64,000 nt of DNA from Podarcis bocagei (lineage: Eukaryota): NCBI GenBank assembly GCA_964188305.1, contig OZ076888.1. One strand, written 5' to 3'. Shown one piece after another: positions 2,047-58,220 of the stretch. Each line of letters opens with the position of its first letter. Within the stretch, counting starts at the first letter, position 1. The notes beneath the pieces were generated by a model. It saw only the letters and a list, made by a program, of their open reading frames with translations. It was not told the DNA's origin and did no database searches. The translations under genes were made by a program, and so were the position numbers.

Positions 2047-3624
2047 AACAACATATTGAGCCAACTACTAAATAGCACCAATTGACTCTTTCCTGCTGAG
2101 TTCTTCTCATCTTGTTAATATTCTCCCATTTGTTCTGTTAATTAAGGCAGATTGGTTTCTATATTTATTACCTCTAGGTGGCAGCAGGGATCAAACCAAG
2201 GTACACTGTTTTCCCCTGCTGGTAAAACTACCCTGTTCAAATTCAGCGATGGAGATTTGGCAGCAATTTGCAGAGCTGCTTGTAGAAAAGGTCTGTGGCG
2301 GATGTATGGACTGCATCCATAGAATCGGATTGCTCCCAACCGTTGCTTTTATTGCACATAGTGGTACCTTTCTCATCACTCAGCTTACATGGGCATCCAG
2401 CAGGAATGAAACAATTTTAGACATTTTGCTTCTAACTAACAGAGCCCGCCATATTGCAATGACAAGATGGCGTGTTAGATTCATGTTGTTATCCAGACTT
2501 GCCACTCAAAAGCATGGCTGCAAATGGATTCACGATATTGATTGTATTGCAGATGGGTTCCAAGACGATATGGATTCCGAGAGCTGTTTTACACATTACA
2601 TTTTCCTATTTGCAGATAATCCTTGAGTGAGTGGTGGGAGAGAGAAAAGAAACTCTTCAGACATCTGTCATGCTCGGATGCTTGCGCATTGACTTTGTCA
2701 GTGGGTGGTTTGACTCAGGGAATAAATGAGGAAAGTTAAAAAAGTGTACTGGAGAATCTCCAAACTCCTGATTCTGGTTTCTTCCTCAACCTCTATACAG
2801 TGCGTGGAAATTGACGACGTCAGTTCCTGAGCAGCCTCCATTCTTACTGGTTTTATTTCTCAGCGAAACTTTAAAAGAGAGAGGGGGAAATATGCACTTG
2901 ACTGAAAGGAGCACTTCTAGATTTGGGTGAAGAAAAGGGAGACAATGGGCATGAAGCCGTCAAGTGATTCTAATTGTGAAATGAAATTCAAATCTGTGAA
3001 AAAATGCATGGGATTGGGCCACACGTCTGCACACTTAACAGGGAAATCCTATAAATGCCTTTTCAGAAATAAGCCTTTAGATGAATGGTCTTACTGCTCT
3101 GCAATTGTGAACTTAATTTCCTTCTGATTAAACATGCATAGTATTGCGTGGCACAACAAAGAGAAACACAGGTAAAGGTAAAAAAGCAACAACGTTTAAC
3201 TATCATCCACAGTTTAGTCTTCACCAAGCGTGAAAAAAGTAAACGGAGTGAACAAATCTGAGTGAAAAATTCACACTGAATAATTTACCCATCTATTTAT
3301 GAATTAATTGGTTGCAAGATACCTTGTGATTTATTTATTTTTTGCAGTTTAATTTTACATCACAACGATCAGTGATATGAATCCCTCTGCATATCCTGCC
3401 AAGCAGTGACTTATTTGACTGTTCCTATTGTGATCCGCAGGATAATTTTAGAACCCCATTTATCCCATTGGCTTCATTCATCAGATTAGCACACTCAGAT
3501 ACATGCCTACTGGTATAATATCTGAGGGCGAATGATACATGGATGCCTATATCAGGGATTTTTGGCAGAGTGTCTAATGTGCTAGGCAAATTTTGCTCCA
3601 TTCTTCACCTTCTCATTTACAATT

Positions 3625-4025
3625 CATAGGAAGCTGCCCTATACAGAGTCAGACCATTGGCCAATTTAGTATTTCCTATATCGACTGGCAATGGCCCTCA
3701 CAGGATTTCAGGTGGTGTTTTCTCCCAGGCCTATCTGCAGATGCTAGGGATACAGTGGTACCTTGGGTTAAGTACTTAATTCGTTCTGGAGGTCTGTTCT
3801 TAACCTGAAACTGTTCTTAACCTGAAGCACCACTTTAGCTAGTGGGGCCTCCTGCTGCCACCACGCTGCCAGAGCACGATTTCTGTTCTCATCCTGAAGC
3901 AAAGTTCTTAACCCGAGGTACTATTTCTGGGTTAGCGGAGTCTGTAACCTGAAGCGTATGTAACCTGAGGTACCACCGTAGAACCTGGGACCTTCTGCAG
4001 GCAAACTACCACTGAGCTATGGCTC
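3625..4025 (-). mobile_element. tRNA-headed SINE interrupted by a Tc1/mariner MITE
   Basis: CATAGGAAGCTGCC..AGTCAGACCATTGG tail (recurs near 12475, 24220, 33660, 36434); head GAACCTGGGACCTTCTGC..CTACCACTGAGCTATGGC resumes after the MITE. Confidence 0.65.
3753..3978. mobile_element. Tc1/mariner (Tigger-like) MITE
   Basis: TIR CAGTGGTACCT..AGGTACCACCG flanked by TA on both sides; inverted copy of 5676-5893. Confidence 0.9.
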
Positions 4026-54320: not shown

Positions 54321-55079
54321 AATTTTGCCGCAATCTGCATAATTTTACTCCTGTGGCATTTGTGCTGCCCTTTGGTTTGGTTCTTTTGTCAAGAACCCCA
54401 GGGTTATTTTCCTGAGTAAAAATGGCTGCTTTTAATTCCTGCACCTTACTGCATGCTTCCCTCCACCATTGTTAGACTAAAAACCCAGCAAGCCACCAAG
54501 CAGGGAAACCTAATGCCTTCCAGATGTTATGGACTAGAACTCCCATCATCTCTGATCAGTCATAAGGTTGGGGCTGCTCGACCCAGTGTTGGGGAAGGCC
54601 GGGTCCTCAAATTTCCCAGTTTACCAAAGTGGAAGTATAAGCAGGATATATTTTTCAAAGAAAGCAGACCGTCGGAAAGATTTTTTTCCTCAGGCATTTC
54701 TTGCTTCCCTCCCCCACCCACTTGCCAGAGGCTCAGTTTGTCTCGCAAAGTGGTGTCATTATGAATGCATCAGGCAATATCACACATGCAGCCTTCATTT
54801 AGCCTTCCAAGCTCAATTACATCTGAGGATGTCTTGGGGTAATTAAGTAATATTAGAACCTTGTCTTTGGCCATCTTTTTTTTTTATAATGTAGTTTTCA
54901 GTGTGTTAAGCCTCATGCGCTCACCCAATCACAGCCAGCTTGGAGTTTGTGAACCTCTAATGCACTTTTGCCATGAATGAGGGCTAATTGCATTTCTGAG
55001 AGATGTCATTAGTGGCAAATTCGTGCTGGCTTTCAAGAGTTAGCACACGGCAAGAAATGTTCCCTCAGGCAACTAGCAA

Positions 55080-55124
<45 letters not shown>

Positions 55125-55128
<4 letters not shown>

Positions 55129-55267
55129 CTTTCGTACAGGAATGTAGGTTTTGGTGTCTTCGGGTGTCTTCCCGTGTAAGAGTTGGGGTGTCTAGGCGAC
55201 GTTTCGACGAGGTCTCACTCGTCATCTTCAGGCTGGTGCTTTCGGCTTCTTGTTACTAGAACAGAGC
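55125..55267 (-). mobile_element. Penelope-like element terminal-repeat fragment inside (TA)n
   Basis: CpG-rich 143-bp insert between two (TA)n tracts, containing the CTGAAGATG..CGAAACGTC motif typical of Penelope pLTRs. Confidence 0.75.
55193..55236 (-). ncRNA. Minimal type I hammerhead ribozyme motif
   Basis: CUGAAGA-U-GACGAG(UGAGAC)CUCGUC-GAAA-CG-UC: conserved core, perfect 6-bp stem II, palindromic ACGU stem III; stem I only 2-3 bp. Confidence 0.7.
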
Positions 55268-55763
55268 TATATATATATATATATATATAATGGGTGTTGT
55301 GGGGGTGGGATTGCAGAGACAGACTTTTTGGTAAATAGGCTGAGAAGAAGCTAAGAGCTGGATGTAATTGTCAGTTAATCATTTGGGAAAGGGGAGTGTA
55401 CCTATCTGACATCAGTGCAACTCTGGGATGTTATAGCCAGCATGATTGCTGCTTTTTCTTTTTCTCCAACATGGTATCCTCCTCATCAACCTTAGTCAAC
55501 ATGACCATGCTGTTCCAGTCCACTCCCGACTTATTTGGGATTCACAGAGACTCAGGAGTTAAGGCTGCCTATCAAGGTTCTTGGAGTGACTATATTAGGA
55601 TCTTGGGAGGCCAGACACACCACCCTTTTGGATCCCGGTAGTTATTGTTGAGCAGTGGCCACAGCAGGGATGGGAAATGGAGGCTTCTCTTGGGCCTCTT
55701 GCTCTGCTTGTTGCTGCTGTTAATTCCTGAGCTAGCAAACAGAGGGCTAGCTACTACGCCGGT

Positions 55764-55911
55764 AAACAAATATTGGTAAATATGTTTTCTCTACCTTGAA
55801 AGTAGTAGTAGTAGAAATCCCTACTCAAATGCATACCTACTCAAATGCATACAAGGCCTTGTGTCTAATAAGGAGGCCGGCATGTCAGAAGCGAGACGCT
55901 CTGTCAACGTA
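55764..55911 (+). repeat. Discontinuous duplication of the downstream flank 57491-57825
   Basis: 55764-55810 = 57491-57537; 55817-55831 = 57566-57580; 55845-55911 = 57758-57825. Confidence 0.95.
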
Positions 55912-56435
55912 AGGTCAATTTTCTGGTCCAAGTTTGAGGCCTGGCTGTTCTCTGCGGCATACACTATAGCCTTCTTTGGTGCCTTTAGGGTTGGTGAGGT
56001 GGTAGCAGAAGCTACCTCAAGTGGAACAACGCGCAGCCTCTTCCTGGAGGACGTGCAGGTGTCCAGCTCAGGCGGGATGGTGCGGGTGCATCAGTCTAAG
56101 ACGGACCAGGGCGGTAAGGGCACCATAGTCCAACTCATGGCCTCCGGCCAGAAGGGCCCACACCCAGTAAAGGACACCAGGCGATACCTTTACCTTAGAC
56201 CTCCCGGCCCTGGCCCGCTCTTTACTCACGAGGATGGATCCCGATTGATGAGGCACCAGTTCACCAGGGTACTTCGCAAAGCTATAGATGCCTGCCGTTT
56301 CCCTTCCAAAGACTACACAGCACATTCATTTAGGATTGGTGCGGCCACAAGGCCGCACACATGGGCCTCCCGGCAGACAGGAGCAAAGAGATGGGCCACT
56401 GGAAATCTAATACCTACAAAAGTTGCATCCGATAG
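55912..56435 (+). pseudogene. Tyrosine recombinase catalytic domain (disrupted)
   Basis: AFFGAFRVGE (box I Arg), SKTDQ (Lys), HSFRIGAAT (HxxR); frameshift near 56350, then MGHWKSNTYKSCIR* with Cys where the YIR tyrosine is expected. Confidence 0.92.
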
Positions 56436-56481
56436 TATTCTGAGAACGCTCTGCTTACCCGTCTTTTCTTTTCTTTCTTTA

Positions 56482-57061
56482 GTCTTAGCTGTCTCGGTAG
56501 TCAAGTGTGGATTTGTGGCCACAGTATCGTGCATTGGGCCCGCCTATGGACAGCAAGTTTTGGCTTCGTGCCTCACCTGGGCTACCATCGTGGGTGCGAG
56601 TTTCCTGGTTTTCAAGAAGGGGCATGCGCTGGCAAGAACTCATGCCACTGCTGAAGGCAAAAGCTGTGCTGTTGGGCCCCCCTAACATTCTAATCATTCA
56701 GCTGGGGGAGAACGACCTGGCTAGCAGGAAGAGTGTGGACTTGTTGTGGAACATGAGAAAGGTCTTGGACGAGTTGGCTGCCTTATTTCCCAGAACAATC
56801 CTGTTCTGGTCCTCTCTTCTGAAGAGAAAGGTTTGGCGCGGTGCGCATAACATTATGGCCATCGAGAAATCCAGGAAACTCTTGAATCGCGCGGTAGCGC
56901 GCAAAGTGCGTTTTATGAATGGCCTAGTTATATCTCATGATGATATCCAGATTGGTGACCAGACCCTATTCCGGGATGATGGCGTTCATCTTTCAGATCA
57001 GAGAAATGACATATGGCTGGCTAACATATCCAATAGTCTTAGGGATTGGTTGCAGCTGTGA
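56482..57061 (+). pseudogene. SGNH/GDSL hydrolase-like ORF (one frameshift)
   Basis: VWICGHSIVHWA (block I, in the 55861 +1 register), RRGM (II), LGENDL (III), DDGVHLS (V). Confidence 0.85.
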
Positions 57062-58220
57062 GGGTATTGGCGACGAGCCTTTTGGCTCGGGTGGCAGTTA
57101 GGCATTGGAATGTGTTGTTGGTGTTTCGGGGGGCAAGGTGTGGCCATTGCCTTCCCCAACAATTTGGGTATTCCGCTAAAGGAATCCGGCGGTCGTGGAT
57201 CCTGTCCGATGCCCGTGTGGCGGGGGGCCATGGCACGATCCTCGGTGACATCAGGAGAGAGCCTATAGTTGGATTAGCATCAACAGGCTCCCCCTCCTGG
57301 TGGTTAACCCCTCCTCAGACTCACCCCTCTTCGAGTGGGTGGAGTCTAATGTTCCGTGGTCCAATGCCTAAGCCAATACCTTCTCACATGCTGTAAACAA
57401 TAAAGTTGTGGCCTTTACCTTACCCATTAACCTTACATTCTGTGTCCACGTGTCTTTATTCCCCAAGCGAGGATCGGGTCCTCGAATCACAAACAAATAT
57501 TGGTAAATACATTTTCTCTACCTTGAAAGTAGTAGTATGTGCAAAGCAAACAGGTTTTTAATGATATCCCTACTCAAATGTCTCTTGGAGGAAGCTCTTC
57601 AAGACTGGTGGAAACTCATACATGCTGAGAAGCCTGAATGAGGTATCAGGACCAGAGCAGAAATAAGAGAGAGTAGTTTGGGGTGTATGCATACTGTCAG
57701 GTTAGCAGGGATTATGCTTCTCTCTGAAATGTTGGCCTCAGAACTCTTGAGGTGGGTATGCATACAAGGGCCTTGTGTCTAATAAGGAGGCCGGCATGTC
57801 AGAAGCGAGACGCTCTGTCAACGTAGGAAGTGCGCACACTGTAAACTCACCTCACACTTGACTCCAGTCACACCTCGCTTTAATGAGCACTTTTGTTTCT
57901 GACCCATTTTATCATCTTTTGGCATTGATGCTGTAACATCCTTGCAGGAAGAAGAGGACTGTGAAAAGTTCTTTGGCGTATCCTTCCTTTTAGATTTGTC
58001 TTTTTAAAAGAAAAGAAAAAATATTGGCACCATGTTTACCACATTTATAAGCAGAAAGCTTGGAAAGGAAAGATCCAGCTGACTTAAAGATGCAATGAAA
58101 TGCTTTTGTGAAGAAGTCTTACTCTTTATTTCTTTAAAGGGTTTAAAGATCAGCTGGGCTTCACATAATTATAACTATATTCAGAAAAGGACAAGGTTTC
58201 TGTCCCTTCAAGAGCTCCTC

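What the first reader, a model, noticed from the sequence alone, without database searches (positions are those of the whole stretch)
55912..57490. Tyrosine-recombinase retrotransposon carrying an SGNH hydrolase
Seen: a YR catalytic domain (FRVGE, SKTDQ, HSFRIG, then GHWKS after a frameshift) followed directly by an ORF with all four SGNH blocks (GHS, G, GEND, DGVH) and a terminal region with AATAAA. Established: DIRS-order elements integrate with a YR, and some vertebrate Ngaro-type elements carry an extra hydrolase ORF of unclear function. Inference: a fairly young but disabled lizard Ngaro-like copy (CpGs largely retained, one frameshift per ORF, YIR changed to CIR). The predicted Ser/Asp/His triad is retained, so intact family members may encode an active esterase.
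Basis: partly seen in the sequence, partly recalled or inferred. Interest (0 to 1): 0.72.

Follow-up and report, generated by a model that had tools for sequence, protein, structure and literature searches.

The report
Dead lizard Ngaro retrotransposon fragment
This is a broken 1.6-kb piece of a known kind of jumping gene, a Ngaro-type tyrosine-recombinase retrotransposon that also carries an esterase gene; the copy is ordinary, but its relatives show that the esterase is kept by selection and is probably made from a spliced message.

Summary
Window 55912-57490 (+) encodes the C-terminal half of a tyrosine recombinase (YR), followed 84 nt later by an SGNH/GDSL-type hydrolase. Each is broken by one frame change, and the YR nucleophile Tyr is replaced by Cys.

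Pfam hits on the window pieces are below threshold, but homology is decisive:
- Lacertid proteins are 83-93% identical.
- Relatives join YR to SGNH, and RT to YR, within single gene models.
- On metagenome contigs the order is RT/RNase H, then YR, then SGNH, with no methyltransferase domain. That is the published vertebrate Ngaro-like layout.

The copy has no gag or RT, no split direct repeats and no natural ends. It lies between a 335-bp host segment and a 148-bp patchwork copy of that segment, so it most likely arrived through repair-type capture, not recombinase integration.

Findings from relatives:
- The hydrolase is under purifying selection (dN/dS 0.07-0.14).
- It usually lacks its own ATG and follows a splice-acceptor-like tract.
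- Its closest solved relative by sequence is the esterase of a zebrafish LINE ORF1 protein.

The scan had already noted Ngaro elements, the spliced esterase exon and a folded 3' repeat elsewhere in this genome.

Verdict: a new member of a known kind, of low-to-moderate interest.

The parts
55764..55911 (.). Left flank copy X (148 bp): a patchwork copy of the right flank Y
   Evidence: X consists of Y positions 1-47 (2 substitutions), then short pieces of Y joined at 3-4 nt microhomologies with one 12-13 nt piece used twice, then the last 55 nt of Y.
55912..56349 (+). YR catalytic domain, first piece. It starts in mid-domain (5' truncated) and holds Arg I (FRVGE), Lys (SKTDQ) and His-x-x-Arg (HSFRIG).
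   Evidence: 83% identical to P0012; colinear with P0014 residues about 168-311.
56350..56351 (+). Place where the YR reading frame changes
   Evidence: The tblastn segments end at 56349 and resume at 56352 in another frame.
56352..56435 (+). YR C-terminal piece with GHWKS and SCIR, then the stop. The nucleophile Tyr is replaced by Cys.
   Evidence: Relatives have GRWKS...SYIR.
56451..56500 (+). 30-nt pyrimidine tract followed by three AG dinucleotides (56481-2, 56487-8, 56499-500): a candidate 3' splice site of the SGNH exon. There is no in-frame ATG between the stop at 56433 and block I.
   Evidence: The window has the highest acceptor score of all loci tested (16 of 16).
56505..56582 (+). 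SGNH block I (VWICGHS; Ser codon at 56523-56525) and the following residues, in the same frame as the YR C-terminal piece
56579..57061 (+). Rest of the SGNH ORF after a frame change near 56575-56585: blocks II, III and V, then the stop. An invariant Gly after block V is Arg.
   Evidence: 93% identical to P0001.
57062..57490 (+). Non-coding 3' part of the fragment. It holds a strongly folded stretch (57045-57400) and AATAAA at 57399-57404, and it ends abruptly at 57490.
   Evidence: z -7.2; no long internal direct repeat; no Rfam family.
57491..57825 (.). Right flank Y (335 bp): host sequence whose two ends are repeated in X
   Evidence: There is no other copy in the window.

Best explanation
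Window 55912-57490 is a dead internal fragment of a Ngaro-like (order DIRS) tyrosine-recombinase retrotransposon of a lacertid lizard. It holds the C-terminal half of the recombinase gene, the downstream SGNH esterase exon, and about 430 bp of structured 3' non-coding sequence.

In intact family members:
- Shown in relatives: an RT/RNase H ORF precedes the recombinase, and the esterase follows it.
- Established for the DIRS order: the recombinase inserts a DNA copy without target duplications.
- Inferred: the esterase is translated from a spliced message that borrows its start codon from an upstream exon. Like the LINE ORF1p esterase, it acts on or binds lipids or membranes during the element's cycle.

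This copy can do none of this. It lacks gag and RT, each ORF has a frame change, and the recombinase nucleophile Tyr is Cys.

Inferred origin: it did not arrive by recombinase integration. A piece of element DNA or cDNA was copied into a break by template-switching repair, which also produced a patchwork duplicate of 335 bp of flanking host DNA.
For: Homology of the window pieces:
- SGNH piece: E 1e-89, 93% identity to a Podarcis muralis model.
- YR piece: E 1e-65, 83% identity.
- All six YR catalytic positions align with relatives.
- The intact relative P0014 matches Cre recombinase end to end.

Linkage:
- YR and SGNH lie in one gene model in P0001, P0002, P0012 and P0075, and in Xenopus P0041.
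- RT and YR lie in one model in P0016, P0029 and P0063.
- YR is followed by SGNH on one strand in at least 17 metagenome loci. RT/RNase H, YR, SGNH with no room for a methyltransferase is seen in L012, L021 and L025.
- The literature describes Ngaro-like elements of amphibians as carrying an SGNH ORF after the YR (PMC9210276; PMC7192593).

SGNH identity:
- The four blocks are conserved across the family.
- The AlphaFold model of relative P0005 has pLDDT 84.6, and 157 PDB matches at E<=1e-3 include the listed top hits, which are SGNH/GDSL-type enzymes.
- The profile hits the ZfL2-1 ORF1p esterase 4c1b at E 2.6e-8; the next hit is at 3.6e-3.

Selection: dN/dS 0.07-0.14 in four pairs.

Splicing:
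- 18 of 23 SGNH exons have no in-frame ATG after the preceding stop.
- Acceptor-like tracts are enriched (Fisher p 0.001; sequences).
- Gene models join an ORF1-like leader to either the YR or the SGNH part.

Decay and capture: frame changes, no RT or gag in the window, flank duplication and patchwork.
Against: - Pfam hits on the window pieces are below the gathering scores.
- Split direct repeats, the structural hallmark of Ngaro, are not seen. The 5' end is missing, and the 3' part has only a 24-nt imperfect repeat.
RT linkage in lacertids therefore rests on gene models, and full architecture rests on metagenome relatives that are only 30-40% identical.
- No RT phylogeny against named Ngaro and DIRS1 references was possible.
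- Splicing is inferred from sequence features and automatic gene models, not from reads.
- The capture mechanism is inferred from junction anatomy alone.
Confidence: 0.88

Rival explanations
1. A full-length Ngaro element first integrated here by its recombinase. Later deletion removed the 5' part, and a separate rearrangement duplicated the flank.
For: Recombinase integration is the normal route for DIRS-order elements (PMC3266345). Deletions in old copies are common.
Against: - The duplication brackets the fragment exactly: X ends where the element starts, and Y starts where it ends.
- X is built from ordered microhomology jumps along Y, which points to a single replicative repair event.
- The 3' end shows no terminal repeat set.
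- Recombinase integration makes no target duplication.
Confidence: 0.2
2. The fragment was retroposed by a LINE machinery (target-primed reverse transcription of a Ngaro transcript), with 5' truncation and an unusually long target-site duplication.
For: - The copy is 5' truncated and bracketed by a direct duplication.
- The bottom-strand sequence at the 3' junction is T-rich followed by A.
Against: - There is no poly(A) or LINE 3' tail at 57490, and the end lies 86 nt beyond AATAAA.
- A 335-bp duplication is far longer than the 5-15 bp reported for ZfL2-1 and L1 (abstract of PMC4245944, listed).
- The patchwork of X is not explained by this route.
Confidence: 0.1
3. The SGNH ORF is the esterase ORF1 of a CR1/L2-type LINE that happens to lie next to an unrelated YR element (Crypton or DIRS1-like).
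For: - The closest solved relative of the SGNH family is a LINE ORF1p esterase.
- CR1 elements with esterase ORF1 are widespread in vertebrates (PMC13343379).
Against: - The same YR-then-SGNH order, on the same strand with a spacing of tens of bases, recurs in four lacertid models, one Xenopus model and at least 17 metagenome contigs.
- No LINE endonuclease or RT follows the SGNH ORF.
- RT/RNase H of the LTR-like type precedes the YR in relatives.
Confidence: 0.03
4. It is a host gene, or a domesticated YR-esterase gene, not a transposon remnant.
For: NCBI pipelines annotate many relatives as genes, for example 'integrase/recombinase xerD homolog' or 'uncharacterized protein'.
Against: - Two frame changes, loss of the nucleophile Tyr and loss of an invariant Gly.
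- Dozens of paralogous models are spread over many chromosomes.
- RT linkage in relatives.
Confidence: 0.02

Closest known systems
Ngaro-like retrotransposons with an SGNH ORF (Xenopus DIRS-53_XT and DIRS-54_XT; zebrafish Ngaro; Goodwin and Poulter 2004 as cited in PMC9210276)
   Same: - The YR is followed by an SGNH hydrolase ORF.
- Relatives have RT/RNase H upstream and no methyltransferase domain.
- Xenopus YR proteins are direct homologues (P0040, P0041), and P0041 carries the SGNH part too.
   Different: - This copy is a fragment without gag, RT or split direct repeats.
- The host is a lacertid lizard. One teleost paper states that Ngaro is absent from lizards (PMC4746887), while the Xenopus paper lists reptiles among the hosts.
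- It sits inside a long patchwork duplication, whereas recombinase integration leaves no duplication.
Esterase domain of zebrafish ZfL2-1 LINE ORF1p (PDB 4c1b; PMC3905857)
   Same: - It is the best sequence match among solved structures (E 2.6e-8, profile positions 50-196).
- It has the same Ser / Gly / Asn / Asp-His catalytic set.
- It too is encoded by a retrotransposon.
   Different: - It belongs to ORF1 of a non-LTR element and is fused to a coiled coil.
- Here the domain follows a recombinase in a DIRS-order element and seems to be a separate exon.
- Enzyme activity and lipid binding were shown only for ZfL2-1.
DIRS1-like elements of Anolis carolinensis (PMC3266345)
   Same: YR-encoding retrotransposons that are abundant in a lizard genome.
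   Different: DIRS1-like elements carry a methyltransferase domain, inverted terminal repeats and an internal complementary region, and have no SGNH ORF. Relatives of the window element show RT/RNase H running straight into the YR.
Cre / XerD-type tyrosine recombinases
   Same: The same catalytic residues and a colinear two-domain match of the intact relative P0014 to Cre. Pfam Phage_integrase and SAM-like N-terminal domains are found in relatives.
   Different: Those are prokaryotic and phage enzymes acting on defined sites. Here the enzyme is part of a eukaryotic retroelement, and in this copy it is truncated and inactive.

Membership tests
Ngaro-like retrotransposons (order DIRS) | Encodes a tyrosine recombinase with the R-K-H-R-(H/W)-Y catalytic set | tested here: met
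   The motifs align with relatives. In this copy the Tyr is Cys and the domain is 5' truncated, so it is a dead member.
Ngaro-like retrotransposons (order DIRS) | RT/RNase H ORF upstream of the YR on the same strand, without a methyltransferase domain | tested here: inconclusive
   Absent from the window because the copy is truncated. Present in relatives: P0016 and P0029 and L012, L021, L025, where the RT/RNase H ORF ends at the YR start.
Ngaro-like retrotransposons (order DIRS) | Split direct repeats: A1 at the 5' end and B1-A2-B2 at the 3' end | tested here: inconclusive
   The 5' end is missing. The 3' part holds only a 24-nt, 83% repeat. Neither flank matches the 3' part. Other lizard copies could not be read.
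Ngaro-like retrotransposons (order DIRS) | In vertebrates, an additional SGNH hydrolase ORF after the YR | tested here: met
   The SGNH ORF starts 84 nt after the YR stop on the same strand. The same order is seen in relatives. The feature is described in PMC9210276.
Ngaro-like retrotransposons (order DIRS) | Integration without target-site duplication | tested here: not met
   The fragment is bracketed by a 335-bp segment and a 148-bp patchwork copy of it. This bears on how this copy arrived, not on its descent.
SGNH/GDSL hydrolases | Blocks I, II, III and V with Ser, Gly, Asn and Asp-x-x-His | tested here: met
   GHS, RRGM, GEND and DGVH are present across two frames and are invariant or nearly so in the family.
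SGNH/GDSL hydrolases | Profile match above the curated threshold | tested here: inconclusive
   The window piece scores 23.2 bits against a 32.9 cut-off. The relative L025 ORF scores 45.6 bits, above the cut-off. Family members score E 1e-3 to 1e-6.
SGNH/GDSL hydrolases | Three-layer alpha/beta/alpha SGNH fold | tested here: met
   The model of relative P0005 (52% identical to the window piece) has pLDDT 84.6. Foldseek top hits are TesA, PAF acetylhydrolase and sialate O-acetylesterases at probability 1.00.
DIRS1-like retrotransposons | Methyltransferase domain after RT/RNase H; inverted terminal repeats plus an internal complementary region | tested here: not met
   No methyltransferase hit in relatives' pol ORFs, which end at the YR start. 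No inverted terminal repeats are seen around the window fragment.
Crypton DNA transposons | YR as the only enzyme, with no reverse transcriptase | tested here: not met
   Relatives of this YR lie directly downstream of RT/RNase H.
CR1/L2 LINE ORF1p esterases | Esterase lies in ORF1, upstream of an APE-RT ORF2 | tested here: not met
   Here the esterase follows a YR, and nothing LINE-like follows it. Sequence kinship of the domain is supported.

The most novel reading that the evidence does not exclude
In Ngaro-like elements the esterase is not a free-standing ORF. It is an exon spliced onto the start of the element's first gene, a subgenomic-message strategy like that of retroviral env. The domain belongs to the same retroelement-specific SGNH lineage as the ORF1p esterase of CR1/L2 LINEs. 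If so, two unrelated retrotransposon orders share a selected lipid- or membrane-directed step.
Probability: 0.45. Interest if true: 0.55.

Novelty: new member of a known kind. Interest (0 to 1): 0.3.

Why it matters
The copy itself is genomic debris. Its value is as a pointer.

- Lacertid and other squamate genomes hold a large, partly intact Ngaro-like family. Its YR and esterase are annotated only as 'xerD homolog' or 'uncharacterized protein'.
- The function of the esterase, unexplained in the papers read here (PMC9210276, PMC6681497), can be approached from three results: strong purifying selection, likely expression by splicing, and sequence kinship with the one retrotransposon esterase that has been studied biochemically (ZfL2-1 ORF1p, which binds acidic phospholipids).
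- The insertion anatomy is also a clean example of element DNA captured by template-switching repair.

Tried and rejected
Tools that were closed or gave nothing:
Copy number, expression and splice junctions remain untested by reads.
- The window SGNH piece alone against PDB gave nothing useful, and NCBIfam gave nothing.
- The viral-contig scan found no relative.
- Rfam found no family in the element; the only hits were chance matches on a (TA)n tract.
- The bacterial promoter/terminator scan is irrelevant for a eukaryote and found nothing.
- The search of earlier findings by sequence was blank.

Ideas tested and dropped:
- Split direct repeats in the 3' part: only a 24-nt imperfect repeat was found.
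- The flank repeats X and Y as Ngaro A or B repeats: rejected. X is a patchwork of Y, neither matches the element's 3' part, and nothing after Y repeats the sequence before it.
- Stop-codon readthrough from the YR into the SGNH part as the general expression route: rejected. The two frames differ in about half of the loci, and several loci have more than one intervening stop.
- Repeats in metagenome loci gave no clear split direct repeats; some were assembly artefacts.
- Goodwin and Poulter 2004 is not held in the library.

Full report
**What is there**

Window 55912-57490 (+) contains two adjacent coding remnants.

The first is the C-terminal half of a tyrosine recombinase (YR):
- It runs 55912-56349 in one frame and holds FRVGE, SKTDQ and HSFRIG.
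- The frame changes between 56349 and 56352.
- It then runs 56352-56432 with GHWKS and SCIR, and stops at 56433-56435.

The second is an SGNH hydrolase:
- Block I (VWICGHS, 56505-56525) lies in the frame of the YR tail.
- The frame changes near 56575-56585.
- Blocks II, III and V follow, up to the stop at 57059-57061.

About 430 bp of non-coding sequence follows, with AATAAA at 57399-57404.

**Is it more than chance?**

Pfam alone would leave doubt. The window pieces score below the curated cut-offs: Phage_integrase E 0.049 and Lipase_GDSL_2 E 1e-4.

Homology settles it:
- The SGNH piece finds lacertid proteins at E 1e-89 (93% identity, Podarcis muralis).
- The YR piece finds them at E 1e-65 (83% identity).
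- In an alignment with 13 relatives, every YR catalytic position is conserved. The window differs at two of them: the Arg of GRW is His, and the nucleophile Tyr of SYIR is Cys.
- The intact relative P0014 matches Cre recombinase from residue 84 to its end.

For the hydrolase:
- The four SGNH blocks are invariant or nearly so in the family.
- A model of the relative P0005 (pLDDT 84.6) matches TesA, PAF acetylhydrolase, sialate O-acetylesterases and other SGNH enzymes at probability 1.00.
- The window copy keeps Ser, Gly, Asn, Asp and His. It has lost a family-invariant Gly just after block V.

**What kind of element**

The window has nothing else of the element. A tblastn of all 74 proteins fetched up to that point hits only 55882-57058, with no RT or gag.

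Relatives supply the missing context:
- The lacertid gene models P0001, P0002, P0012 and P0075, and the Xenopus laevis model P0041, contain YR and SGNH together in this order.
- P0016 (P. muralis), P0029 (Lithobates) and P0063 contain RT and YR together.
- A metagenome scan with the SGNH profile returned 30 contigs.
- At least 17 of these contigs have a YR end followed by the SGNH start on the same strand.
- Three contigs (L012, L021, L025) show a 570-620 aa RT/RNase H ORF that ends at or overlaps the YR start, leaving no room for a methyltransferase domain. The YR and then the SGNH ORF follow.

This is the layout published for Ngaro-like elements of amphibians: an SGNH ORF after the YR and no methyltransferase (PMC9210276; PMC7192593). 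It is unlike the DIRS1-like elements of Anolis, which carry RT, MT and YR domains (PMC3266345).

The structural hallmark of Ngaro, split direct repeats, could not be shown. The 5' end is missing, and the 3' part holds only a 24-nt imperfect repeat. I therefore file the fragment as Ngaro-like on gene content and homology, with the repeat test left open.

**How the copy got here**

The fragment is bracketed exactly by host sequence Y (57491-57825, 335 bp) on the right and X (55764-55911, 148 bp) on the left.

X is made of Y's first 47 nt, short internal pieces of Y joined at 3-4 nt microhomologies (one piece used twice), and Y's last 55 nt. Neither X nor Y occurs elsewhere in the window.

Several facts bear on the route:
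- Recombinase integration makes no target duplication.
- The fragment begins in mid-domain.
- It ends 86 nt past AATAAA, with no poly(A).

The simplest reading is a single repair event with template switching that copied a piece of element DNA or cDNA into a break and partly re-copied the flank. This is inference from anatomy. LINE-type retroposition, or later deletion of a full-length insert, are less likely rivals.

**Age**

CpG observed/expected is 0.57 in the fragment against 0.19-0.35 around it, and G+C is 52% against about 43%. So it is younger than its surroundings.

The two conserved blocks of X and Y differ at 3 of about 115 positions. That is too few for a date.

**What relatives say about the esterase**

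- Selection. In four independent pairs of metagenome relatives, the SGNH ORF has dN/dS of 0.07-0.14. The least saturated pair has dS 0.32 and ratio 0.12. Seventeen of the 22 metagenome SGNH ORFs run about 170-197 codons from block I to their stop.
- No start codon. In 18 of 23 cases (15 of 20 after dropping near-duplicates), there is no in-frame ATG between the preceding stop and block I. The stop-free lead-in is only 9-73 codons.
- Acceptor-like tract. The DNA just upstream is typically a pyrimidine tract ending in YAG. On a simple score this is enriched over other positions of the same contigs (Fisher p 0.001). The window has the strongest example (56451-56500).
- Gene models. Automatic models in lacertids, Rhineura and Hemicordylus join an ORF1-like basic leader either to the YR or, a few residues before block I, to the SGNH domain. 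The leaders of the two kinds of model are weakly but colinearly similar.
- Readthrough from the YR cannot be general, since the frames differ in about half of the loci.

I conclude, as inference, that the esterase is an exon expressed from a spliced message.

- Closest solved relative. The family profile's best solved relative is the esterase domain of zebrafish ZfL2-1 LINE ORF1p (4c1b, E 2.6e-8). The next hit is five orders of magnitude weaker. That enzyme hydrolyses esters and binds acidic phospholipids and liposomes (PMC3905857). The paper does not mention DIRS or Ngaro elements.

A lipid- or membrane-directed role is therefore the best-supported guess for the Ngaro esterase.

**Relation to earlier notes of this scan**

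After I had reached these readings, look-ups showed that the scan had already noted the following on other DNA of this genome:
- intact and hidden Ngaro elements;
- a follow-up that reads the SGNH frame as a spliced second exon;
- a roughly 290-300 nt folded RNA in the Ngaro B repeat.

The last note fits my finding that window 57045-57400 folds far better than shuffles (z -7.2, 0 of 100 shuffles) and matches no Rfam family. These notes agree with my results but are not independent evidence.

The frame changes are only located.
- No reads were laid, so there is no evidence on copy number, expression or junctions.
- The species was not given. The best hits point to a Podarcis-like lacertid.

**Verdict**

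The object is a dead fragment of a known kind of element in a host group where that kind is little described. The side results on the esterase and on the insertion anatomy give it low-to-moderate interest.

Noticed in passing
window 57045-57400 (+): The non-coding 3' part of the fragment folds into a long multi-stem RNA closed by pairing of 57046-57109 with 57360-57398. MFE is -165.5 kcal/mol, z -7.2 against dinucleotide shuffles, and there is no Rfam match. It may correspond to the folded Ngaro B repeat that the scan noted elsewhere.
   Followed up: partly
P0011 (Podarcis raffonei 'lipase member M-like'): This gene model starts with about 55 residues of the Ngaro SGNH C-terminus (through block V) and then continues into a lipase M-like protein. 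It is either an element-derived first exon or an annotation chimera.
   Followed up: no
L002:595-3089 (metagenome contig): An RT/RNase H ORF (595-2409) is followed directly by an SGNH ORF (2520-3089), with no YR between them or in the 830 bp after it. This may be a YR-less variant or a deletion derivative.
   Followed up: partly
L008:4042-4680 and L009 (metagenome contigs): An intact SGNH ORF of this family has no YR, RT or other long ORF within 7.5 kb. The L008/L009 pair has dN/dS 0.07, so it is a candidate for a host-kept (domesticated) or exon-only copy.
   Followed up: partly
P0116, P0117, P0119, P0124, P0126, P0139, P0148 (Podarcis muralis): Many separate loci give models of nearly the same length (412-414 aa). 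Those read in full share the layout of a short helical N-terminus, a long low-complexity stretch, a basic patch, then the SGNH domain. This suggests a recurrent spliced or fused ORF1-esterase product.
   Followed up: partly
window 55060-55290: Two (TA)n tracts flank a roughly 130-bp G+C-richer insert. Rfam gives only chance miRNA-like hits on the TA repeat. Another first-stage note reads a hammerhead/Penelope motif here; I did not examine it.
   Followed up: no
L014:1518-1822 and 3417-3721: Downstream of a YR-SGNH pair, a direct repeat of about 300 bp (97% identity) recurs 1.9 kb later. It could be part of the element's terminal repeat system or two adjacent copies.
   Followed up: no
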